From IMG/VR virus record IMGVR_UViG_3300046787_000408, positions 1-64,000 of that record: a stretch of 64,000 nucleotides of DNA; one strand, 5' to 3'. Both the position numbers and the translations under genes were made by a program. The notes beneath the pieces were generated by a model that was not told the DNA's origin, did not search any database, and saw only the letters and a list, made by a program, of their open reading frames with translations. Below are positions 3,001 to 22,694 of this stretch, piece by piece. The number at the start of each line of letters is the position of its first letter. Position 1 is the stretch's first letter.

Positions 3001-4490
3001 CATTGTGTGCTAGCATAGGTATTGCCATAACGCACAGTGAATTTTTCAAGATTGTTGATCAACTGAATGCTGTTCAGCGTCATGTACACATAGCCATCGT
3101 CGTTGACGTATTCAATTTGCCAAATACCAGAGCGTTGATCTAGCGGTACTTCGGTGGTTTCAGAATACAACAAGCTGTCATAACTGCCTGGTTGTCCGTT
3201 GAGAGAGTTGTCTCGATCCAAGGGATCATATACAGTTGTCTTGAACCAGCCGCCTAGGTCAGCGTCTAATGCAGGCTGAGTAAACACTATGGTACGGCCA
3301 TTGAGTTCAGTAATACCGTCAATACCACCGTAGGCTGCAATAAAATCAGCCACTGACACATTGTCCAACTGATCAAACTTGAGCTCAGTAAGCAGATCTA
3401 CTGTGCCAATACTAGGCAAACCGTAGTAAAAATCTTGTGCTGTCTTGGTTGGCACGTTGAATGTAATTGTGCCAAGGTCTTCACCGTTGTTGGTGACGCC
3501 ATATACATCTCTGCTGCTGATGTTGGGAGTGATTGGAACTTTACCGTTTACACCTGGGGCAGACTGAATCCAAAAGCCTGGGCCAGTACCAGCAGTGGCG
3601 TTGGCCACTGCGATGGTGCCTTGCATGTTGCTTTGTGTAGAACTAGCATAGAACAAAGTATCAGGAGCGTCTTGTGGTACTACAAATGTTACCTGTCCAA
3701 CAACTGCTCCGTTGTTGGTTACACCTGAGTTGTAAACGTTGCTCAAGCCTGTGGTTGGAGCTGTTTTGATATAGAATGGGTATGCACCATCTAGGTTCAT
3801 GGTAAACACGTAGGTATTACCGCGAACCAGCGTCAGCGTAGGATTGCTTTGTGAATCAATTACATAGCTACTGATGCCAGAATTGCTTACTCTGTAGTTG
3901 ACAGTTTCTTTGTTGTTTTGTGCAACTTCAAAAGTATAACTACCACCACGCACCAGGTCAATAGTGGGATTAGTTCCAGCCAGACCTGAGAATGAGTACA
4001 CGCCGTTTGCACGATCTACAACAAAGTCATCAGTGGCTGGAACTCCAGTTGCTGCTACATCTACTGATGCAGGGCCGCCGGGAATCCAAAAGTACTGACT
4101 AAAGTTGATGAAGGTATCCCAGTTGATAAAAGGATCCCAGGTGTAGTATTGACTCTCAAACAGTCGATCAGGACGGCTAGCATTGCCTCCCTGATAGGCT
4201 ATTGCATCCAGGATGCCTGGATATGTCATTACGTCGCGAACCTTGTTTGTATCAGGTTCCAGACTTACAACTCCAGCTTCTAACTGATAGTCAGCACGAG
4301 TTTTGTTGGGTTCTACCACATAACGGTCATTGGGGTTTACGCCGGGCCCTACACTGCGACCAATAAAGCCCTGAGTCTTTTTGAACTTGGGCTCCTGAAT
4401 CAGTTGATCCAACGTTGCAGCCAAAAACTGCTTGTTTACATCAGTCTGAAAGATTTCAGGTAAAAATTCTACACTACGTACTCTTGCCAT
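3..4490 (-). CDS. Very large baseplate/virion structural protein (gp7-like wedge position), 3' end beyond the left edge, >1496 aa
   Basis: Absent from the ORF track, consistent with no stop inside the window. ATG at 4490 overlaps the upstream TAA (TAATG) and reads MARVRSVEFLPEIFQTDVNKQFLAATLDQLIQEPKFKKTQGFIGR; the same frame reads ...EASWWNSSAYPFA at the edge. Follows the gp6-like gene. Confidence 0.8.
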   Translation of the reverse strand, partial: MARVRSVEFLPEIFQTDVNKQFLAATLDQLIQEPKFKKTQGFIGRSVGPGVNPNDRYVVEPNKTRADYQLEAGVVSLEPDTNKVRDVMTYPGILDAIAYQGGNASRPDRLFESQYYTWDPFINWDTFINFSQYFWIPGGPASVDVAATGVPATDDFVVDRANGVYSFSGLAGTNPTIDLVRGGSYTFEVAQNNKETVNYRVSNSGISSYVIDSQSNPTLTLVRGNTYVFTMNLDGAYPFYIKTAPTTGLSNVYNSGVTNNGAVVGQVTFVVPQDAPDTLFYASSTQSNMQGTIAVANATAGTGPGFWIQSAPGVNGKVPITPNISSRDVYGVTNNGEDLGTITFNVPTKTAQDFYYGLPSIGTVDLLTELKFDQLDNVSVADFIAAYGGIDGITELNGRTIVFTQPALDADLGGWFKTTVYDPLDRDNSLNGQPGSYDSLLYSETTEVPLDQRSGIWQIEYVNDDGYVYMTLNSIQLINNLEKFTVRYGNTYASTQWYKNDAGFFREIPLLTAAQDTLYYQDGTDPEIFGRIRLIEQTQSDTLFIDELLGKPAYTSPNGVVFTNGLKVVFRGQVEPAEYINKEYYISGVGTAIELLPVTNYITPETYVVDGDGSTEATEPGELDYLTIDRAALDLNAWSRSNRWFHIDVINATAVYNNTEAVIDNAYRAKRPIIEFRPGLRMFNMGTEGKQPVNIIDFTETDAFSNIEGSTGYSTGGYTFTEGSRVIFAADLDVNVRNKIWVVNFITPDSIAPYVEQPLIHLTLATDGEVLVDQSTVCLDGTTLKGISFWYDGVVWAEAQLKTGVQQAPLFNIYDADGVSFANLAKYPSTTFAGSKLFSYAVGDTGVLDPVLQFPLQYLNLNNVGDIVFENNLYKDTFLYVRDNVSTTESISIGFVREYDSRAVFQRQIGWNTAATDTLIRQQFKFTYSGELLKLDVQAQSSNVNIPAVQVYVGSAFRDPGTYTVEVFDNSTTIALDNTYAIGDIVEVLVLSDQISQVAFYQIPINLEKNPINGNSDSFTLGTVRTHYESICENLTTLTGPINGANNTRDLGNIGPYGQVILQQSAPLVLPGYFNRSQEYNIFASLQYNSREYQKFKNLMLEEVTRLTIGFETPGQILTQAMENLTAGRIEINPFYWSDMLPTGSVFIENSYTVGLITTNVFDTVQIYNYTSANYLGLLVYKNSQLLTRGFDYTVAVDGPRVTILTPLAVGDVVTIQEYTVTYGNFVPNTPTKLGLYPAYRPEIVETKTTTGTAVVIVGHDGSQTPAFDDIRDQVLLEFETRIYNNLKLDGNPVPLLITDVLPGNFRETGYSYSDINSLLSTDFLSYVGWNKLDYTSQNYLPSNEFSWNYSSSQNKLSFDRLNNTNLLGAWRGINRYFYDTENPALTPWEMLGFAIKPTWWNTVYGPGPYTSDNLVLWDDLEAGRVADPDGAYILPAYARPELTTVLPVDSEGNLVSPFVSVVGGYDDTSFQKSWVAGDGGPVEASWWNSSAYPFA

Positions 4491-14356: not shown

Positions 14357-14656
14357 TTAGAATCCCAGTGTTTCTTGCAGAGTTGATAACTTGGGCAAAT
14401 ATATTTTCTTTCCTGCCACAAAGTCCAAAGGTGGGGCAGTCAAAGTGTTGGGATTACGTTGATAAAACACCCACCATAAATTAGAATTTTGATAAAGGTC
14501 AAATGCCAACAGATCAGGACGATACTGATAAGTTTGATTGATCACAAATGACAAGTCGTCTGTGAGTCTAGGTATAGGTCTATCCACCATGACATCCAAA
14601 AAGAACTGACTGTAGCCAGTTGCATAGTATGGACTGGTTGCTCCGTATGTGGCCAT
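14357..14656 (-). CDS. Baseplate wedge gp53-like (LysM-like) protein
   Basis: YRPDLLAFDLYQNSNLWWVF...N...GKKIYLP. Confidence 0.85.
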   Translation of the reverse strand: MATYGATSPYYATGYSQFFLDVMVDRPIPRLTDDLSFVINQTYQYRPDLLAFDLYQNSNLWWVFYQRNPNTLTAPPLDFVAGKKIYLPKLSTLQETLGF

Positions 14657-17529
14657 TACCAGAACCCTCCTTTGAGCAAGCTGCCGTTAGCAAACTCTTT
14701 GACACTGAACTGTTGACTAACTTGACTGCGTGTGTTGGTAGGCAACAGTGTGATGCTGATTTCTATCTTGGTTGGCACGTAAGTGGCTCCTGTTAGATTG
14801 TCGACGTTTTGAGTTATAGAACCAGGTGTTGGGGAACTAGGCTCAGCGCCTTTGGGCACTCCGGCTGCGGTCAACCGACTCAATGCAGCACTTAACGGAT
14901 TGGTACTGATACCACCTGTTTTGGCTCGTTGGCTAAACAGGTTCCCGTAGTTGTTCGGACCCCATGCTCGTATATAGTCAACTTCGTTGGGCAAGCTGTA
15001 ACTAAAGTTGGATACCAAGCAAGGATGTTCGTTAAATTGGTATTCGCCAAACCCGCTGAGATATACCAAAGGAGGTGGTGCACCACGCAAGGCATCTTGG
15101 CCATAGAACATGCGTGTTACAGATCTAAAAAAGTGTATCACGGCCAGCATGTATTCTGCTTCAGCAGTGTCTTGAGCAGTAAAGGTGCCACGAATATTGA
15201 TGTCGTTGACCACACTGTTCTTGTAGAAATATCCACGATAGTTGCTGTGAACTAAATCGTACTTGTCATAGTTGGCAGCATAGGATGTTTCAATAGTTGG
15301 AGTGTAGGGAAACACTACCCCGTCTGTTTGAAACAGTGGTGCCAGTATACCTGGCTCAGGATCTTTGTAGAGATACTGTGCGCCAGGTGCCAGTTGCAAT
15401 CGTACACGCCAGTCTGGTGCAGCAGCTTCATTGTTTCGCGCCTCCAGTGTTGCTTGTTCTTTGGCTTTTTGTATAGTGGCATTTTGCCTTGACAGCAAGT
15501 CTGTTACTGCACCCAAGCCGCTGGCCTGTACCAAACTGTCTACAGTATCAGTTACAAATCCTGTTAGATTGTCAGGAATTCTTTCAGGTAAACTTCTAAT
15601 ACCGGCCACTAACGAATTGGCAGTGTCTTCAGCTTGTTGTGCCAGTCCAGCAACCTGAGCCGCAGTAAGTTGCAATGCACCAGTAACAGACGGAAGTGCT
15701 GGCAATGCAGCAGTAAATCCGGCTGCAAAGCCTGTAGCAATACCTGCTAGGTCAGTGGGCACAGATGGAACAGACGATAATACATTGTTGACTGCACCAG
15801 TTACTACACCAGTTGCTCCTGCTAGGTTAGTAGGTACTCCAGCGTTTGATGCAACTGATGAAAAAGACGCATTAGCAAATCCTGCTGAGTTAACAAGACC
15901 TGTTACTGCAACCACAGTGGCGCCGTTGGCAGATAACCCTGTTGAGCCACTTGAACCTGGACCAGCTACTAGACCAGCAGCGGCATCATTGATAGCAGCT
16001 TGTCTAGCTGCTTCGGTAGGATTGGTGGCGTTTAACGCCCAGCTTTGAAAAGTGGCTTCGTCCCAACCGTTTTCAGCTTTGAGTTGATTTTTAACATTAA
16101 CATCGGTAAGAGCTGCACTGGCAATACCATATGCTTCCTTGTTGCTGCCTTGATATGCTGGCCAATTTGGATCGTTCCAAGGTGCAATGGTGCTGCCCGG
16201 AGGTGTTACTCCATTTTGACTAAACAGTGCTGTTCGATCGTCTGCGCGATTAATTTGATTTTGTGCCTGCGCAACCAGTTTTGGATCAGCATAAGGGTCG
16301 GAGATACCTTGCCGAGCCCAGGTTTCTCTAACTAATCCCCCGTTATTGGGATCGTACTGTGATCCTTGCCACTGAATAAATCTAGCTGTTTCAGAGTTAG
16401 CATCAACTACTATGCTGCCTTCAGAAGTAGATACAGTTCTAGCCACTTCAGGCAGCGCTGTTATTGTCACAGTTCTAAACGGAGTGTCTACAGTAGTAGT
16501 ACCGTACGTGGGCACACTGATATCTATAGCTACTGGTGGTTTTGAGTTGCCTTCAAAGTAAGCGGTGATGTCAATATTTCTACCATTTTCTAGTGTAATA
16601 TAAACTTGGCCAGTGTTTGGATCACTAACAGTAGGAATTGCAGCATCTGGCGGAAATCCATTGGCGATAGCTGCTCTTCGAATATCATCGCGAGCCTCTT
16701 GTCTTGAAAGTTGTTCGGCCCGAATAAATTCAGTAGTGCCTCGATAAAACTGAGGATTTCCGCTGGCATTCAGTGTTCCTGGTTCTACTTGCGAAGGTGA
16801 ATTCGTAATACGATTTAACTGAGCAATTTCTTGAACAGCTTCTGGAGGGAGAAAATACGTACCGTCGGAGGCCCGGCTGTAGCGACCAACTGCACCAGTA
16901 GCACCTTCAATTCTAGCAATGTCCTCAACGGTCATGTTTTTGCCGCCATACAATTCAACTGCTAGTTTTTCCCAGGCTTGGTTTCCGTTCTTGACATTGC
17001 TTAGATCAACATTTCGAATTTCAGGATCTAGTGCAACTTCACGCCGGGTCGCAAAAGGATCACGAGCAGCATCTGCATATGAAAACTGGACTGGCGAATA
17101 ATAATCAGGTGCTGTTGGAAGGGGAGTGGGATTAAACCCGTACTCTTCTTTCCAGACTGCTCCAACTTCAGGAATAATGTTTGCAATTTCATTAAGATTG
17201 CTGTTGGAGCGAATGGTATAATCTTTTCTATCAGTACCAGAAATAAAATTTGCTTTATCTTCGCTGTAGCGATATATTACGCCGCCTGCAAAGTCGGTAT
17301 AAGAACCCACTGGAGCGTTTTTCCAGTAACTATCGTAGTCAGCTGCAATGCTCACCTGTGGCGGAGAAGCAACTACACCAGTATTGGTTACTGTTGGCAA
17401 CGGTGCTGGCACTGGAGCAGGTGCAGCAGATTCTACCCGAGGTGGGGGTGGTGGTGGCGGAGCGGGTACAGGATCGTCTTCCCAGACTGTAAATGAGTTT
17501 TCTCCAGTTCCTACGGTGATGTATGCCAT
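14656..17529 (-). CDS. Tail-tube initiator/baseplate cap (gp48/gp54-like) C-terminal domain with a ~700 aa N-terminal extension
   Basis: C-terminal VFPYTPTI...INIRGTFTAQ...HFFRS...GAPPPLVYLSGFG...PCLVSNFSYSLP...PTKIEISITL tube-like fold; immediately upstream of the gp53-like gene. Confidence 0.65.
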   Translation of the reverse strand: MAYITVGTGENSFTVWEDDPVPAPPPPPPPRVESAAPAPVPAPLPTVTNTGVVASPPQVSIAADYDSYWKNAPVGSYTDFAGGVIYRYSEDKANFISGTDRKDYTIRSNSNLNEIANIIPEVGAVWKEEYGFNPTPLPTAPDYYSPVQFSYADAARDPFATRREVALDPEIRNVDLSNVKNGNQAWEKLAVELYGGKNMTVEDIARIEGATGAVGRYSRASDGTYFLPPEAVQEIAQLNRITNSPSQVEPGTLNASGNPQFYRGTTEFIRAEQLSRQEARDDIRRAAIANGFPPDAAIPTVSDPNTGQVYITLENGRNIDITAYFEGNSKPPVAIDISVPTYGTTTVDTPFRTVTITALPEVARTVSTSEGSIVVDANSETARFIQWQGSQYDPNNGGLVRETWARQGISDPYADPKLVAQAQNQINRADDRTALFSQNGVTPPGSTIAPWNDPNWPAYQGSNKEAYGIASAALTDVNVKNQLKAENGWDEATFQSWALNATNPTEAARQAAINDAAAGLVAGPGSSGSTGLSANGATVVAVTGLVNSAGFANASFSSVASNAGVPTNLAGATGVVTGAVNNVLSSVPSVPTDLAGIATGFAAGFTAALPALPSVTGALQLTAAQVAGLAQQAEDTANSLVAGIRSLPERIPDNLTGFVTDTVDSLVQASGLGAVTDLLSRQNATIQKAKEQATLEARNNEAAAPDWRVRLQLAPGAQYLYKDPEPGILAPLFQTDGVVFPYTPTIETSYAANYDKYDLVHSNYRGYFYKNSVVNDINIRGTFTAQDTAEAEYMLAVIHFFRSVTRMFYGQDALRGAPPPLVYLSGFGEYQFNEHPCLVSNFSYSLPNEVDYIRAWGPNNYGNLFSQRAKTGGISTNPLSAALSRLTAAGVPKGAEPSSPTPGSITQNVDNLTGATYVPTKIEISITLLPTNTRSQVSQQFSVKEFANGSLLKGGFW

Positions 17530-17553: not shown

Positions 17554-17559
17554 TATTTA
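17554..17559 (-). promoter_or_regulatory. Late promoter TAAATA for the baseplate operon
   Basis: ccggTAAATAagcc, 24 nt upstream of ATG 17529. Confidence 0.7.
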
Positions 17560-17590
17560 CCGGTATAAAAAACTGCGCCGTTTACTCTGA

Positions 17591-18436
17591 TTACACTGGA
17601 GGTTGTACAGGTATGCCAACAAATGGCTGATTGTCAAGCTGCTGTATAGCCAGCTGAAGATCTACTGCTGGACTCACTGTGTAGTTTACTGTGGGGTTGA
17701 CTGTGGTAGTTGCAACAGTTGTGGGTACACCAGGATCTGATTGAGTAGACGTTGGTGCAATTCTTACTGAAACTGGACGAGTTGCTGTGTACTGAGGACT
17801 AGAATAGTACACTGGTACTTCTGCCGCAGCAGCCGCTAGTGCAGCTGATTCAGCGTCAATTATGGTTATTGTTCTGCCTGCTGCTGCTACTGTTGCAGTT
17901 GTTTGAGCCTGTGCTTGTGACTCTGCTTGCGTTATTATCTGCACTGTTTGTATATCTTGCGCCAGCTGTTGCTGGTACAACTGCTGTTGAATTTCTGCAG
18001 CCTGTTGTGCAGCTTGTGCAGCAGCGGCTTGTTGTGCAGCCAGTTGTGCTTGAATAGCTGCCTGTCGAGCTGCTTCTTCATAGGCAACTTGTTGCGAAGC
18101 CTGAGCTTGAGCTGCTAGTTGTGCTTGGGCAGCAGCTTCTTGTGCAGCTTGGTAAGCGGCTTGTTGTGCTGCCGCTTGCTCGGCAGCAGCCTGGGCTTGT
18201 GCGGCTGCTTGTTGTGCGGCTGCTTGTGCAGCCTGCTGGGCTTGCTGTTGGGCTTGATACTGTTGTTGAGCAAGATACTGTGCATAGGCCTGTTGCTGTG
18301 CAATCTGTTGTTGTTGGGCCTGATATTGCTCATAAGCTCGCTGTTGAGCAAGTTGTTGTTGATACTGATAGTACGCCTGTTGTTGTGCTTGGTACTGATA
18401 ATATTGTTGTTGTGCTATGTATTGTGCGTAGTCCAT
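17591..18436 (-). CDS. Gln/Ala/Tyr-rich low-complexity protein (prion-like N-terminus, Q/A helix, Thr/Val/Pro-rich tail)
   Basis: 281 aa ORF with its own TAAATA (18455-18460) and AGGAG RBS; fills the space between the operon and gp55. Confidence 0.75.
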   Translation of the reverse strand: MDYAQYIAQQQYYQYQAQQQAYYQYQQQLAQQRAYEQYQAQQQQIAQQQAYAQYLAQQQYQAQQQAQQAAQAAAQQAAAQAQAAAEQAAAQQAAYQAAQEAAAQAQLAAQAQASQQVAYEEAARQAAIQAQLAAQQAAAAQAAQQAAEIQQQLYQQQLAQDIQTVQIITQAESQAQAQTTATVAAAGRTITIIDAESAALAAAAAEVPVYYSSPQYTATRPVSVRIAPTSTQSDPGVPTTVATTTVNPTVNYTVSPAVDLQLAIQQLDNQPFVGIPVQPPV

Positions 18437-18454
18437 GGTGGCTCCTGTTTACCA

Positions 18455-18460
18455 TATTTA
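18455..18460 (-). promoter_or_regulatory. Late promoter for the Q-rich gene
   Basis: gggTAAATAtggtaaacAGGAGccaccATG. Confidence 0.7.
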
Positions 18461-18471
18461 CCCAATTCTGG

Positions 18472-18499
18472 TTGACATCTGTGGCGTTTATGCTACAAT
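18472..18499 (+). promoter_or_regulatory. Sigma70-type promoter for the gp55-like gene
   Basis: TTGACA-16 nt-TACAAT with an extended -10 TG; ATG 9 nt downstream. Confidence 0.75.
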
Positions 18500-18508
18500 A
18501 AGTACTAT

Positions 18509-19408
18509 ATGTCCTTAATCCCTAAACCTCCTGCCAAAGTAAACTATCTCAACAACCGAGATATCCTCAAAGAAATTCATCTCAGCAAAAATACCTACTG
18601 CTGGTATCGTGACAGAGACCTTGATCATCAATTTGATTTGATTCTGCCGTCAGTGGACAAGATCAATCAGCGCACTGTGGTAGAAGCACGTAAAAATCGT
18701 GCTGACCGTATCAAACGCGAAACAGGTGAAGTAATTGATCAAAAGAAAATTGCCAACACTGATCTAGTGTTTCGAATCACTGCTTGGGATCATATTCCCA
18801 AGGCACCCAAGAAAATAACCAAAGCCGAAGCCAAACGCAAAAAACTAGAAGACATCTTTGAACTAGAAGATGCTGTAACTGATGATCCATTGGCTGATCT
18901 TGTGGACGAACCTGTGCTGAACATGAACTATGTGCGACTGAATTTTCCGCCGTTTGAGCACTACAGACTAGACGAAGACAAGGTTCCTTTTATTGTGGGC
19001 CGCAGTCACTGGAAAGGCGATTTGGCCACAGGCGAGTTTTGTCGTGAACACGGTACTATGACTCGCAAGTTGGCCACTATGTTTATGAAACTGTGTGAGC
19101 GTTATGCCACACGCTCTAACTGGAGAGGATACACCTACAATGAAGAAATGCGTGGACAAGCCCTACTTCAACTATCACAGATTGGTCTTCAATTCGATGA
19201 GTCTAAGAGTCAGAATCCGTTTGCATACTATACGGCGGCTATTACAAACAGTTTTACACGTATCCTAAACATCGAAAAGAAAAATCAAAACATTCGCGAT
19301 GACATTTTGGAGATCAACGGTCTCAACCCATCATGGACACGCCAAAACTCCGGCAGCAAAAGCATGGCAGCTATGTCTGGTCCGGTTATTTCCAGCCTAG
19401 ATGAATAA
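18509..19408 (+). CDS. gp55: Late-transcription sigma factor, T4 gp55-like
   Basis: YLNNRDILKEI N-terminus; RSNWRGYTYNEEMRGQAL...FDESKSQNPFAYYTAAITNSFTRILNIEKK; directly upstream of gp47/gp46 as in T4-like phages. Confidence 0.9.
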   Translation: MSLIPKPPAKVNYLNNRDILKEIHLSKNTYCWYRDRDLDHQFDLILPSVDKINQRTVVEARKNRADRIKRETGEVIDQKKIANTDLVFRITAWDHIPKAPKKITKAEAKRKKLEDIFELEDAVTDDPLADLVDEPVLNMNYVRLNFPPFEHYRLDEDKVPFIVGRSHWKGDLATGEFCREHGTMTRKLATMFMKLCERYATRSNWRGYTYNEEMRGQALLQLSQIGLQFDESKSQNPFAYYTAAITNSFTRILNIEKKNQNIRDDILEINGLNPSWTRQNSGSKSMAAMSGPVISSLDE

Positions 19409-20291
19409 AACTCTACATCTAACTCACCCTGAATTTGATGTATCCTTGGTGCTTCCTGGGAGTGTGTTGTTGAATGATAGTACTCAACTGCTTTCGGGAC
19501 AGTGCTATCATACTTCCTTGGGAGATTTATCTGTACAAGAAGTGTTGTGCATCAGCAAGCAATTTGATGTTATAAATTTTATACCCGACAAGTTTGATGC
19601 TGACAGTTCCATCTACCACGAAACTGTTGTCATACTCAATTATTTGTCTCATAAAAAACCAGTAACTGGATACACACCTGTTGGTCAACAGGAATTTTTA
19701 TCACTGGATGTTCATGATCGATCTGATGGCCCAACAGTGTGGGTTTTTGGTTGCAGTCACAGCTATGGCGTAGGGCTAACGGCCGATCAAGAGAATTTTG
19801 GGCAACACATAAGTCAGCACACCAAGTTGCCATTGAAATTGGTAGCACAATCAGGTTCTAGTGTTCAATGGAGTTTGCGACATTTGATGCATGCCAACTT
19901 CCAAGAAGGAGATTTTGTAATCTGGCAACTTACATCTCCGGAACGCATCAGTTACGGGTACCCACCGTCAGAGCTTAGATTCTCTCAAGCAGTGAGTCGA
20001 CATTTGCTTGAAACGTACAATGATCAACAGCTATTGTTCAATCAGTTATCGTTGTTCAATCAAGGTGTACAACATTTAAGATGTCAGCCAGTCAAATTTG
20101 CAGTTATATCCATTAGTGGATCATCGCCGCTGTTTTATCCTTGTTTGACCGAATACAGCAAGCACCCAGAATTTTGTCATGTGCCAAATTACCTATTGGA
20201 TTTAGGAACAGATGGAGAACACATGGGTCCTTTGAGTCACAAGGCTCTTGCGCAATCCATACTGAATCATGTAAACTACAGCAATGAGTAA
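19401..20291 (+). CDS. SGNH/GDSL hydrolase-like accessory protein
   Basis: VFGCSHSYGVG (block I) and DGEHMG (DxxH) motifs. Confidence 0.6.
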   Translation: MNKTLHLTHPEFDVSLVLPGSVLLNDSTQLLSGQCYHTSLGDLSVQEVLCISKQFDVINFIPDKFDADSSIYHETVVILNYLSHKKPVTGYTPVGQQEFLSLDVHDRSDGPTVWVFGCSHSYGVGLTADQENFGQHISQHTKLPLKLVAQSGSSVQWSLRHLMHANFQEGDFVIWQLTSPERISYGYPPSELRFSQAVSRHLLETYNDQQLLFNQLSLFNQGVQHLRCQPVKFAVISISGSSPLFYPCLTEYSKHPEFCHVPNYLLDLGTDGEHMGPLSHKALAQSILNHVNYSNE

Positions 20292-21300
20292 TCTATTTAA
20301 AAAAGCCGCAATCTTTACCGACATCCACTTTGGCTTGAAGTCAAACTCAGTTCTTCACAACGAGGACTGTTTGGCGTTTGTCAAGTGGGCAACTGCCAAA
20401 GCAAAAGAGGAAGGTTGTGAAACCTGTTTGTTCTTGGGCGATTGGCACAACAATCGATCAACTATTAACATTGTCACACTCAACTACAGCTTACAATCCC
20501 TGGAGCACCTAAATGAGCATTTTGAACGTGTTTATTTTATTCCTGGTAACCATGATCTATATTATCGCGATAAACGTGACATTCAAAGCGTGGAGTTTGC
20601 AAAGCACCTCCCTAATGTTCAAATCTGTAATGATTGGTTCAGCGACGGTAATGTCACTATTGCCCCTTGGCTATGTGGAGACGATCATAAACGCCTGGCC
20701 AAACTAAAAGGCGATTACTTGTTTGGGCACTTTGAGCTGCCCGGTTATTTGATGAACGCAATGGTGGAGATGCCAGATCATGGGGAACTGCAACGAGATA
20801 GTCTTGGGGGATTTGGTCATGTGTTCACTGGGCACTTCCACAAGCGACAGACTAAAAAGAACATTACCTATATCGGTAATGCGTTCCCTCACAATTATGC
20901 AGACGCTGGTGACGACGAAAGAGGTCTCACTGTGTTGGAGTGGGGAAGAGCGCCTGAATTTCATGCTTGGCCTGCTCAACCAACATATCGTGTATATGGA
21001 CTCGCCAACCTTATTGACAACGCTGCAACACTTCTTAAGCCCAAAATGCATGTTAGAGTGAACCTAGATATTGAGATCAGTTACGAAGAAGCTAACTTTA
21101 TCAAGGAAACGTTTGTGCGGGACTACAATCTACGTGAGATGGCCCTGATTCCCAACAAGTCTGCAGGAGTAGATGAAGACATGGCACCTGGTGAAGTCAA
21201 GTTTGAATCAGTAGATCAGATTGTTACAGACCAGCTCACAAACATCGAATCTGAATTTTACGACAATAAACTCTTGCTCAAGATTTATCAAACATTATGA
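20284..21300 (+). CDS. gp47: Recombination endonuclease subunit (gp47/SbcD/Mre11)
   Basis: Metallophosphoesterase motifs TDIHFG, LGDWH, GNHD, GHF, GHFHK. Confidence 0.95.
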   Translation: MSNLFKKAAIFTDIHFGLKSNSVLHNEDCLAFVKWATAKAKEEGCETCLFLGDWHNNRSTINIVTLNYSLQSLEHLNEHFERVYFIPGNHDLYYRDKRDIQSVEFAKHLPNVQICNDWFSDGNVTIAPWLCGDDHKRLAKLKGDYLFGHFELPGYLMNAMVEMPDHGELQRDSLGGFGHVFTGHFHKRQTKKNITYIGNAFPHNYADAGDDERGLTVLEWGRAPEFHAWPAQPTYRVYGLANLIDNAATLLKPKMHVRVNLDIEISYEEANFIKETFVRDYNLREMALIPNKSAGVDEDMAPGEVKFESVDQIVTDQLTNIESEFYDNKLLLKIYQTL

Positions 21301-22694
21301 TTGTTTCATTGAATGCAATTTCTAAAAATTTTAGACTCTTCAATAATGATGAGTGGCTTTCACGCGATCTACTAACTGAATTTGTTGATCATTGGAAACT
21401 GATTTTTGTTGAAAAAAATCAGTTAAAAGCTGGAGATAAAATAGGTCTAGGATTTGCACTCACTGACATATATTATTTCGGCGCACTTATTGCTGCTGCA
21501 GAACTTGGACTCAAGTTGGTTGTGCTCGATGTGTCGTCAACAAAAAACGCAACCTCTGAATATTTTTTCCCCCTTGATCTTTTTGTGTCTGGTCCCATGT
21601 TGTCACCTGACAAACATCAGTATTACAGTACAGTCAGTTTACAAACTGAATTTTGGCATGTATGGGACAATTACACTACTACGTCTGACGGTTGGTGGGA
21701 TCATTCAACTAGATCTAGTATAGACCAGGATCTTGCGCTATTGTCATGCACTAGCTCAGGAACTACCAATCGTCCAAAAAAAGTTGAGCATAGTCACAAA
21801 TTTATATTCAACATATCTAAAAGAAATTGTAATCTGTTGAAATTCCGGGGCAATGTAATGCATATTAGAAATTTGCATCATGGCAGCAGTATTGCAACGT
21901 ACTTCCTTCCTTCACTAATGTCTGATGAGTGCACCGGACACTATGTTTTCAATGTAGAATCCCAATATCAAACAGCAGACCTGGTTCGGTACTGTGCTGA
22001 TCACGATATCAATCATATACAATTTCCATATGTAAATTTTGCTGAACAATTTTTAAAACAGGCAGTTTTACAAAATATCAAGTTCAATGATCTTACAATA
22101 TATGTACTATCATACATCAATCCGGCCTGGCAATCATTGATCCGACAGTGCGGCTTGGTAAAAATTGTCAGTATATTTGGTTGCAACGAAACTAGTGGGC
22201 CTTTGTTTACTAACAGTCTACAATCGAATCAGGTAGAGTTTGATTGCAAAATTTTTGTGGCCCTTGATGACTTTTATCAATTTGATTTTAATCAGCAAGA
22301 TCAACTAGTAGTGCATATCAATGACTACAACACATCTATTGTGATGCAGGATTCTTTCAGTCGGAACAATAATGTTTTTACCCACCATGGCCGCAATGAT
22401 CTTGTACGAATCAATGATGTTGAGGTTGATCTGTTTTGGATTTTGGATCTAGCAAAGAACGAACAGATCAATGCACAAATTGTACTAGACCGAGATCGGG
22501 AAAAACTATATCTAGCTGTTTGGGATCAAACTGACTTACAGTCAGTAACTGATCAGCTAAACGATAAGATTATTGATCGTTACAGCAACAAAGTAGTTAT
22601 TAGTTCTGCTATGCACTTAACCATGGACGAGTGTAGCTACGGAATCAAATTAGACCATGAAATCATACGAAATATTTTTCGAAAAAACATATGA
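21297..22694 (+). CDS. Adenylate-forming (ANL/AMP-binding) enzyme-like protein
   Basis: CTSSGTTNRPKKV P-loop, IFGCNETSG, D...HHGRNDLVRIND and C-terminal GIKLD; AT-richer than its neighbours. Confidence 0.75.
   Translation: MIVSLNAISKNFRLFNNDEWLSRDLLTEFVDHWKLIFVEKNQLKAGDKIGLGFALTDIYYFGALIAAAELGLKLVVLDVSSTKNATSEYFFPLDLFVSGPMLSPDKHQYYSTVSLQTEFWHVWDNYTTTSDGWWDHSTRSSIDQDLALLSCTSSGTTNRPKKVEHSHKFIFNISKRNCNLLKFRGNVMHIRNLHHGSSIATYFLPSLMSDECTGHYVFNVESQYQTADLVRYCADHDINHIQFPYVNFAEQFLKQAVLQNIKFNDLTIYVLSYINPAWQSLIRQCGLVKIVSIFGCNETSGPLFTNSLQSNQVEFDCKIFVALDDFYQFDFNQQDQLVVHINDYNTSIVMQDSFSRNNNVFTHHGRNDLVRINDVEVDLFWILDLAKNEQINAQIVLDRDREKLYLAVWDQTDLQSVTDQLNDKIIDRYSNKVVISSAMHLTMDECSYGIKLDHEIIRNIFRKNI

What the first reader, a model, noticed from the sequence alone, without database searches (positions are those of the whole stretch)
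17591..18436. Late-expressed prion-like Gln/Tyr/Ala protein
Seen: the first ~65 residues are almost entirely Q, Y and A (MDYAQYIAQQQYYQYQAQQQAYYQYQQQLAQQRAYEQY...), followed by ~100 aa of Q/A helix and a T/V/P-rich tail. Codons vary, so it is not a DNA microsatellite, and it has its own late promoter and AGGAG RBS. Established: Q-rich, Tyr-spaced, charge-poor domains typify yeast prion and phase-separating domains. Inference: a phage amyloid/condensate protein or filament-forming coiled coil, possibly an assembly scaffold or decoy. It sits back-to-back with gp55.
Basis: partly seen in the sequence, partly recalled or inferred. Interest (0 to 1): 0.62.

Follow-up and report, generated by a model that had tools for sequence, protein, structure and literature searches.

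The report
Gln/Ala/Tyr helical rod, phage baseplate operon
A freshwater jumbo phage carries a real, selection-maintained late gene for an orphan protein that is nearly all glutamine, alanine and tyrosine; it looks like a 28-nm unbroken helical rod with a conserved docking tail, placed at the head of the baseplate genes, and not like a prion domain.

Summary
Window 17591-18436 (minus strand) encodes a 281-aa protein. Residues 1-65 are 88% Q/Y/A, 66-165 are 79% A/Q, and the tail is T/V/P-rich. There is no lysine and no Gly/Pro in the first 186 residues.

It is a real gene. Seven distinct metagenomic relatives carry it in the same slot, dN/dS is 0.06-0.15 at near-saturated dS, and the start-codon position, AGGAG and a GGTAAATA late-promoter-like box are conserved.

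The genome is a 300-kb jumbo phage from a freshwater metagenome. The gene opens a leftward baseplate operon. The next gene encodes a protein whose C-terminal domain has a tail-tube-initiator-like fold.

AF2 predicts one continuous helix (residues 3-188, pLDDT about 80-96) and an unfolded but highly conserved C-terminal module. That module also occurs fused to an unrelated Lys-rich N-terminus.

The Q/Y segment is the most position-conserved part of the protein and contains no G, S, P or N. This is unlike yeast-type prion domains.

The best reading is a lineage-specific helical rod docked at the baseplate-tube junction. Virion presence, oligomeric state and expression remain untested. No homologue of known function exists.

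The parts
17591..18436 (-). CDS of the 281-aa Q/A/Y protein (P0001), stop codon TAA at 17591-17593
   Evidence: ORF list and translation. dN/dS is 0.09-0.16 against two full-length orthologues at dS 0.8-2.0. Orthologues occupy the same slot in L004/L009, L008, L018, L019/L023 and L020/L021, with partial copies in L003 and L005.
18242..18436 (-). Residues 1-65: the Q/Y/A segment (49% Q, 20% Y, 18% A)
   Evidence: Composition. It is 71-89% identical across orthologues, against a 30-34% mean and 55% maximum in same-composition shuffles. dN/dS is 0.06-0.11. AF2 predicts helix with pLDDT 85-96. Tyr is replaced by Phe, Ile, Ala or Leu in some orthologues.
17873..18241 (-). Residues 66-188: the A/Q-rich continuation of the same predicted helix
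   Evidence: Composition. AF2 helix runs from residue 3 to 188, with pLDDT about 78-91 up to residue 170. No Gly or Pro occurs before residue 187.
17594..17872 (-). Residues 189-281: conserved T/V/P-rich C-terminal module, the putative docking element
   Evidence: 46 invariant columns across 6 sequences. The module is retained at 86% identity in P0006, which has an unrelated Lys-rich N-terminus. A divergent copy is in L089. AF2 of the monomer gives pLDDT below 50 except for a short helix at 256-268.
18442..18446 (-). Shine-Dalgarno AGGAG, 5 nt upstream of the ATG
   Evidence: Read from the sequence. It is invariant in four loci whose coding synonymous sites are near saturation.
18455..18462 (-). 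GGTAAATA, a T4-late-promoter-like box 18 nt upstream of the ATG
   Evidence: TAAATA occurs 117 times in the genome against about 256 expected, and 65 copies lie within 60 nt upstream of an ORF start in the sense orientation. The box is invariant in four loci. A gp55-type sigma factor is encoded next door.
17554..17561 (-). Second GGTAAATA box, in the 61-nt spacer before the next gene
   Evidence: invariant in six loci, including the divergent L089. The downstream baseplate genes therefore do not depend on read-through from the Q/A/Y gene.
14656..17529 (-). Downstream neighbour of 957 aa: a hypervariable N-terminal extension plus a C-terminal tail-tube-fold domain resembling baseplate tube initiators
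   Evidence: phrog_12050 virion structural protein, E 1e-51. It is homologous to PA5oct gp347, which was detected in virions by MS. AF2 followed by VIA-align gives Z 9.1-9.6 to the Afp7/Pvc7 class, cyanophage A-1(L) initiators and P1 and KP1 baseplate chains.
18509..19408 (+). Divergently transcribed gp55-type late sigma factor, with a sigma-70-like promoter at 18472-18499
   Evidence: phrog_12791, E 5e-74. Promoter is TTGACA-16-TACAAT, matching 11 of 12 positions with an extended -10 TG.

Best explanation
The gene encodes a lineage-specific accessory protein of the tail baseplate module. It is transcribed late from its own gp55-type promoter.

The protein has two functional parts.
- Residues 3-188 form one uninterrupted alpha-helix, about 28 nm long if straight. 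Its surface is almost only Gln, Ala and spaced aromatic residues. It probably self-associates or packs against other helices through Gln hydrogen bonds and Ala/Tyr contacts, as a rod or fibre rather than an amyloid.
- Residues 189-281 form a conserved Thr/Val/Pro-rich module that is unfolded alone. It docks the rod onto a partner at the baseplate-tube junction. The likeliest partner is the product of the adjacent gene (a tube-initiator-like protein) or the hub.

**Shown:** the gene is real and under purifying selection; the promoter and RBS are conserved; the position is conserved; the N-terminus is modular; a helix is predicted.

**Inferred:** virion or assembly association; the docking role of the tail; self-association of the rod.
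For: **Real gene.**
- dN/dS is 0.06-0.15 in all three regions, with dS about 0.8-2.
- The start codon alternates ATG and GTG at the same position.

**Late expression signal.**
- The TAAATA motif is depleted genome-wide yet concentrated upstream of ORFs.
- The box and the AGGAG are invariant in relatives.

**Structural context.**
- It is the first gene of a leftward run that continues with a tube-initiator-like protein, a LysM-like wedge protein, a 1006-aa structural protein, a gp5-like hub/lysozyme, a gp25-like protein and a gp6-like protein.
- The same gene order, minus this gene, holds in PA5oct, where these products were found in virions by MS.
- Every family member found lies directly upstream of the tube-initiator-like gene. 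This includes the Lys-rich variant in L006 and the divergent copy in L089.

**Rod.**
- AF2 gives one helix from residue 3 to 188 with pLDDT up to 96.
- The 186-residue run free of Gly and Pro is the longest in the proteome.
- Tyr to Phe, Ile or Leu changes in orthologues point to a hydrophobic or aromatic packing role.

**Docking module.**
- The C-tail has 46 invariant columns and survives an N-terminal domain swap.
- Low monomer confidence fits folding on binding.

**Background.** PolyQ and polyA stretches are reported to form and associate as coiled coils (PMC4049302, title and abstract).
Against: - No virion proteomics or RNA data exist for this uncultured phage.
- No heptad periodicity was found.
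- The gene is absent from about 65 of about 78 close relatives and from PA5oct and Atu_ph07. It is therefore dispensable for building a baseplate.
- The AF2 alignment had only 6 sequences, and long Q/A helices can be over-confidently predicted.
- Operon position alone is weak evidence of function.
- The partner of the C-tail is unknown. Co-occurrence with one N-terminal motif of the neighbour is broken by L018.
Confidence: 0.45

Rival explanations
1. Prion-like, amyloid or condensate-forming protein. The Q/Y-rich N-terminus would drive self-templating aggregation or phase separation late in infection, for example as an assembly hub or decoy.
For: - Residues 1-65 are 49% Q and 20% Y with almost no charge, and the protein has no Lys.
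- This composition would probably score in Q/N-based predictors. Such predictors flag thousands of phage proteins, mostly tail and baseplate components (PMC5694896).
- Q-rich helices can mediate aggregation (PMC4049302).
Against: - The first 113 residues contain no G, S, P or N, and the segment is 18% Ala.
- AF2 predicts an ordered helix at pLDDT 85-96, not disorder.
- The segment is the most position-conserved part of the protein, at 71% identity in the most distant orthologue against 47% for the tail. This is far above same-composition shuffles, and dN/dS is 0.06-0.11.
- By my recollection of the literature, prion-like domains conserve composition rather than sequence.
- One relative replaces the whole N-terminus with a Lys-rich domain and keeps the tail.
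- PLAAC and PAPA could not be run here.
Confidence: 0.12
2. Internal, tape-measure-like lumen protein. A helical rod would be stored in the tube or hub channel, anchored by its C-terminus at the tube initiator or hub, and expelled with the DNA on infection.
For: - The gene lies directly upstream of the tube-initiator-like gene. From my memory of the T4 and Mu genome maps, not checked here, tape-measure genes occupy that position in T4 (29 before 48 and 54) and Mu (42 before 43).
- It has a long unbroken helix and a conserved C-terminal end.
- It has a late promoter.
Against: - 186 helical residues span only about 28 nm, which is far too short to measure a jumbo-phage tail.
- The gene is missing from most close relatives, so it cannot be the ruler.
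- The helical region changes length between relatives (L005 has a deletion, L019 has insertions).
- There is no sequence similarity to any tape-measure family.
Confidence: 0.15
3. A late non-virion protein whose location in the baseplate operon is incidental. Possibilities include an assembly chaperone or scaffold that is not incorporated, or a host-directed or surface-directed late function.
For: - The slot between gp55 and the tube-initiator gene is variable. Atu_ph07 has a cytidyltransferase there and most relatives have nothing.
- The gene has its own promoter, and the next gene has another.
- It is dispensable in relatives.
Against: - The C-terminal module is always found immediately upstream of the tube-initiator-like gene, even in divergent contigs and after a domain swap.
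- The extreme rod-like build is typical of structural rather than enzymatic or regulatory proteins.
Confidence: 0.2
4. Not a protein-coding gene: an open frame produced by biased CAA/GCA-rich DNA.
For: Low-complexity DNA opens frames on both strands. The plus strand carries 118-aa and 126-aa ORFs across the same region.
Against: - dN/dS is well below 1 in this frame, with near-saturated synonymous change.
- The RBS and start-codon position are conserved.
- The non-repetitive tail is conserved.
- Codon usage matches the genome.
Confidence: 0.02

Closest known systems
Q/N-rich prion-like domains as predicted by PLAAC in phage proteins (Tetz and Tetz 2017, PMC5694896)
   Same: Very high Gln with spaced Tyr and very low charge. 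It sits among tail and baseplate genes, which is the class where most phage prion-like predictions fall.
   Different: - No Asn, Gly, Ser or Pro, and rich in Ala.
- Predicted as an ordered helix.
- Position-specific conservation under strong purifying selection.
- The phage predictions in that paper are computational; a text search of it for 'experimentally' found nothing.
PolyQ/polyA coiled coils (Pelassa et al. 2014, PMC4049302)
   Same: Helix-prone Gln/Ala stretches that can associate as coiled coils. This is the nearest physical model for how such a rod could self-associate.
   Different: - Here Q and A are interspersed with conserved aromatic residues over 186 residues, not homopolymeric tracts.
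- No heptad signal was found.
- The context is bacteriophage, not eukaryotic.
- Self-association is untested.
Phage tape measure proteins (T4 gp29, Mu gp42)
   Same: A long helical protein. Its gene lies directly upstream of a tube-initiator-type gene, which by my recollection of the T4 and Mu maps is where their tape-measure genes sit. The C-terminal end is conserved.
   Different: Too short (about 28 nm), absent from most relatives, and without sequence similarity to any tape-measure family.
Modular phage fibres such as T4 fibritin (from general knowledge, not tested here)
   Same: A conserved terminal module plus a long helical shaft, with exchange of one end between relatives.
   Different: - No heptads.
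- No detectable homology.
- The conserved end here is C-terminal, and the shaft is low-complexity Q/A/Y.
- The trimer test gave no answer.
PA5oct / Atu_ph07-type jumbo phages (Arenbergviridae and relatives)
   Same: gp55 is about 40% identical. The gene order is the same: gp55 back-to-back with the gp347-like structural protein, then the LysM-like wedge protein, a large structural protein and gp5-like hub.
   Different: Neither phage has this gene. In PA5oct the gp347 homologue directly abuts gp55, and Atu_ph07 has a cytidyltransferase in the slot.

Membership tests
Yeast-type prion-like domain (PLAAC/PAPA sense) | Q/N-rich, charge-poor stretch of about 60 residues or more | tested here: met
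   Residues 1-65 are 49% Q with 3 charged residues, but contain 0 N.
Yeast-type prion-like domain (PLAAC/PAPA sense) | Intrinsic disorder, with helix-breaking G, S, P or N interspersed | tested here: not met
   Residues 1-113 contain no G, S, P or N. AF2 predicts helix at pLDDT 85-96.
Yeast-type prion-like domain (PLAAC/PAPA sense) | Composition conserved rather than sequence | tested here: not met
   Identity is 71-89%, against a 55% maximum in same-composition shuffles. dN/dS is 0.06-0.11 at dS above 1.
Yeast-type prion-like domain (PLAAC/PAPA sense) | Self-propagating aggregation (ThT, SDD-AGE, Sup35 swap) | not testable with these tools
   Needs bench work. PLAAC and PAPA scores were also not computable here.
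Canonical alpha-helical coiled coil | Heptad (about 3.5-residue) periodicity of hydrophobic residues | tested here: not met
   Fourier power at periods 3.4-3.7 lies below the 95th percentile of shuffles in every region and residue class tried.
Canonical alpha-helical coiled coil | Long helix without breakers | tested here: met
   186 residues free of Gly and Pro. AF2 helix spans residues 3-188.
Canonical alpha-helical coiled coil | Homo-oligomerisation | tested here: inconclusive
   The three-copy complex job returned 'no answer', which is neither for nor against.
Tail tape measure protein | Gene adjacent to and upstream of tube-initiator or hub genes, and a long helical protein | tested here: met
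   Synteny, tube-initiator-like fold of the neighbour and predicted helix.
Tail tape measure protein | Universal in the clade and long enough for the tail | tested here: not met
   Absent from about 65 of about 78 related loci. The helix is about 28 nm long.
T4-type late gene (gp55-dependent) | TATAAATA-like box shortly upstream, and gp55 encoded by the phage | tested here: met
   GGTAAATA lies 18 nt upstream of the ATG. The motif is enriched genome-wide upstream of ORFs and conserved in relatives. gp55 is present.
T4-type late gene (gp55-dependent) | Late transcript observed | not testable with these tools
   No RNA run holds this phage.
Any Pfam or PHROG family | Significant profile match | tested here: not met
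   No family matched the whole protein at E up to 0.1 (Pfam) or 0.01 (PHROGs). The tail alone and the divergent orthologue matched nothing better than E 1.8 at a cut-off of 10.

The most novel reading that the evidence does not exclude
A phage has evolved a sequence-constrained, ordered Gln/Tyr/Ala 'polar zipper' rod. This would be a helical, non-heptad, charge-free self-assembling or surface-binding element whose Tyr/Gln face binds a periodic target such as a host polysaccharide, S-layer or another virion lattice. It would be plugged into the baseplate through a portable C-terminal docking module that can carry alternative heads, such as the Lys-rich one. That would be a new class of modular baseplate accessory and a natural, ordered counterpart of prion-like sequences.
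Probability: 0.15. Interest if true: 0.7.

Novelty: new variant of a known kind. Interest (0 to 1): 0.45.

Why it matters
- **Reading low-complexity sequence.** This Q/Y-rich, charge-poor sequence would probably be flagged as prion-like (PLAAC was not run), yet it evolves like an ordered structural element. It has strong position-specific purifying selection, contains no helix breakers and is confidently predicted as a helix. It is a caution against reading composition alone. It is also a natural test case for how Gln/Ala/Tyr helices assemble.
- **Phage biology.** It defines an orphan, portable C-terminal module. The module is always encoded next to the tube-initiator-like gene of an abundant clade of freshwater jumbo phages: more than 590 related gp55 loci are in IMG/VR. 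The module can carry different N-terminal heads, which suggests a plug-in site at the baseplate-tube junction.
- **Limit.** None of this is yet tied to a phenotype.

Tried and rejected
**Searches for known relatives**
- DNA and protein searches of the phage collection, with the whole region, the whole protein and the tail alone, found no match.
- Pfam and PHROGs, on the whole protein, the tail, the Lys-rich variant and the divergent orthologue, gave nothing significant.
- ESM Atlas by features gave no usable hit.
- Two word-index protein searches found only two relatives, P0005 (a truncated gene call) and P0006.
- A profile of the C-tail searched against 1.84 billion representatives found only two fragments of the same family. 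The module therefore has no detectable distant kin.

**Structure and binding**
- The homotrimer complex prediction returned 'no answer' (score 0.00; controls not run). I count it neither for nor against binding.
- The Fourier test for heptad or hendecad periodicity showed no signal at 3.4-3.7. Weak peaks near periods 4.9-5 (A versus Q) and 3.2 remain uninterpreted.
- A PDB sequence search with the neighbour's domain profile found nothing. Only the fold comparison worked.

**Co-occurrence and RNA structure**
- I considered that the protein co-occurs with a specific 22-residue N-terminal motif of the neighbour (begins MAYITV). This holds in 5 lineages but is broken by L018, and adjacency alone could explain it, so I do not rely on it.
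- I considered that a conserved block after the stop codon is a terminator hairpin. No stable fold was found (z 0.2 to 1.1).

**Expression**
- No RNA run holds this phage. The one metatranscriptome contig lies on gp55 at under 90% identity and comes from a relative.

**Not run or not encountered**
- PLAAC, PAPA, COILS and Marcoil are not installed.

Full report

Yes. Window 17591..18436 holds a 281-codon ORF on the minus strand. Its composition:
- Residues 1-65: Q 49%, Y 20%, A 18%.
- Residues 66-165: A 45%, Q 34%.
- Residues 201-281: V 16%, P 15%, T 14%.
- No lysine anywhere, only 5 Arg and 15 acidic residues.

Codons are mixed (CAA 50 / CAG 28; all four Ala codons) and follow the genome's usage. 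Tandem Repeats Finder sees only weak 2-4-copy arrays. This is not a microsatellite.

The protein is an extreme outlier in its own genome:
- Q is 28% against 4.6% proteome-wide, and the next protein has 13%.
- The best 60-residue window is 95% Q+Y+A, against 45% for the runner-up.
- Its 186-residue run without Gly or Pro is the longest in the proteome.

**2. Is it a gene?**

Yes. Relatives were found by back-translated patterns, by word search and by surveying 80 loci that encode a close gp55.
- Full-length orthologues lie in the same slot in L004/L009 (281 aa), L008 (285 aa), L018 (284 aa, GTG start), L020/L021 (280 aa) and the more distant L019/L023 (299 aa).
- L003 is cut by a contig end.
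- L005 has lost residues of about 14-65, with a frameshift.

Against L004 and L008, dN/dS is 0.06-0.15 in each of the three regions, while dS is about 0.8-2. gp55 next door gives 0.03.

The opposite-strand ORFs listed are by-products of the biased DNA.

The Q/Y segment is the best conserved part of the protein. It is 71% identical in L019, against 55% for the mid region and 47% for the tail. It is 83-89% identical in the closer orthologues. Same-composition shuffles average 30-34% and never exceed 55%.

**3. Genomic context**

The window is the first 64 kb of a single 299,983-bp contig. The source is a freshwater metagenome.

The adjacent divergent gene is a gp55-type late sigma factor (phrog_12791, E 5e-74). 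It is about 40% identical to those of Atu_ph07 and PA5oct.

Leftward from the Q/A/Y gene lie:
- A 957-aa protein (phrog_12050). Its C-terminal 232 residues are homologous to PA5oct gp347, a virion protein by MS. They fold as a tail-tube domain whose best structural matches are baseplate tube initiators: the Afp7/Pvc7 class, cyanophage A-1(L) initiators, and P1, KP1, T4 and Mu baseplate chains. VIA Z is 8.4-9.6 over 115-147 residues, the model pLDDT is 62, and Foldseek E is about 2e-3. This is a moderate but coherent match.
- A 99-aa LysM-like wedge protein.
- A 1006-aa structural protein.
- A gp5-like hub/lysozyme.
- A 466-aa protein with no family match.
- gp25-like and gp6-like proteins.

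So the gene heads the baseplate operon. PA5oct and Atu_ph07 share the order but lack this gene.

**4. Expression signals**

TAAATA is under-represented in the genome, with 117 copies against about 256 expected. Yet 65 copies lie within 60 nt upstream of an ORF start in the sense orientation. This is the behaviour expected of a T4-type late promoter core.
- One GGTAAATA sits 18 nt upstream of this ATG, followed by AGGAG. Both are invariant in four loci whose synonymous sites are near saturation.
- A second GGTAAATA precedes the next gene and is invariant in six loci.

No RNA data set holds this phage, so late transcription is inferred and not shown.

**5. Architecture**

AF2, with a 6-sequence alignment, predicts one helix from residue 3 to 188. 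The pLDDT is 85-96 for the first 100 residues and 78-91 up to residue 170. Residues 184-281 fall below 50 apart from a short helix at 256-268. At 1.5 Å per residue the helix would be about 28 nm long (inference).

No 3.5-residue hydrophobic periodicity is present. It is therefore not a textbook coiled coil. A three-copy complex job gave no answer.

In orthologues several Tyr residues are replaced by Phe, Ile, Leu or Ala. This points to packing rather than hydroxyl chemistry.

The C-terminal 85 or so residues have 46 invariant columns. They also occur behind an entirely different, Lys-rich N-terminus in P0006 (L006/L007), again directly upstream of the tube-initiator-like gene. A more divergent copy lies in the same position in L089.

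A profile of this module found nothing else among 1.84 billion representatives. No Pfam, PHROG or Atlas match exists.

**6. Distribution**

In about 65 of about 78 informative gp55-related loci, the tube-initiator-like gene abuts gp55 directly. On a quick gp55 tree the Q/A/Y-positive loci fall in one 13-row subclade (SH-aLRT 90) and need three changes. This fits one gain with losses, or cassette exchange.

The N-terminal extensions of the neighbouring protein are themselves hypervariable, at 363-1265 aa. They often contain Q/A/E-rich helical stretches.

**7. Interpretation**

The best-supported reading is a dispensable, lineage-specific accessory of the baseplate-tube junction. It would be a helical Q/A/Y rod carried by a portable C-terminal docking module (confidence 0.45).

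The prion/amyloid/condensate reading is not excluded experimentally but is disfavoured (0.12). The segment has no G, S, P or N, is predicted ordered, and evolves under position-specific constraint. A large PLAAC screen shows that such compositional hits are common among phage tail proteins (PMC5694896).

A tape-measure-like lumen protein (0.15) and an unincorporated late factor (0.2) remain open.

**8. Novelty**

This is an orphan family with no characterised relative. In kind it looks like a new variant of modular, rod-like phage tail accessories. Interest is moderate. The unusual point is an ordered, strongly constrained 'prion-like' composition, but no function has been demonstrated.

Noticed in passing
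window 18472-18511 (+): gp55 has a near-consensus sigma-70-type promoter (TTGACA-16-TACAAT with an extended -10 TG). Its ATG lies only 9 nt after the -10 box and has no Shine-Dalgarno, so the mRNA would be leaderless or nearly so. Relatives L005 and L008 carry an insert of about 18 nt there that contains an RBS.
   Followed up: partly
whole genome G000; in the window for example 8496, 31700, 37682, 38964, 63531: 25 of the 65 ORF-proximal TAAATA boxes lie only 2-8 nt from the start codon. This suggests many late mRNAs are leaderless.
   Followed up: partly
window 14656-17529 (-), and L010-L088: The tube-initiator-like protein carries an N-terminal extension that is hypervariable among close relatives. 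Total length ranges from 363 to 1265 aa. The extension holds poly-Pro runs, Q/A/E helices and several unrelated N-terminal types, while the C-terminal domain stays 59-88% identical.
   Followed up: partly
L005:5680-5760: In one relative the Q/Y segment (about residues 14-65) is deleted and the frame is shifted. This is either a pseudogene or an assembly collapse of the low-complexity stretch.
   Followed up: partly
L006:348-911 and L007:348-911 (P0006): This variant of the family has the Q/A/Y rod replaced by a Lys-rich domain of about 100 aa, with the C-terminal module 86% identical. It occupies the same position, upstream of the tube-initiator-like gene.
   Followed up: partly
window 17562-17590 (-): A block (TAAAC, then a few bases, then GTTTTT) between the stop codon and the second late box is conserved in six loci. 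It does not fold into a stable hairpin, and its role is unknown.
   Followed up: partly
G000:C1:282057-297281: An array of 38 tRNA genes includes Gln(UUG), two Ala(UGC) and Tyr(GUA). These read the dominant codons of the Q/A/Y gene.
   Followed up: no
window 19401-20291 (+) and 21297-22694 (+): Two ORFs flank the gp47-like nuclease gene, and neither has a family match. One is 296 aa and sits between gp55 and gp47. The other is 465 aa and carries an SGTTNRPK motif reminiscent of adenylate-forming enzymes.
   Followed up: no
L014, about 3300-3890 (-): One relative has a 197-aa Q/A/E-rich helical ORF in the slot next to gp55. It is probably the split-off N-terminus of the tube-initiator-like protein and not a member of this family, since it has no C-tail match.
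   Followed up: no
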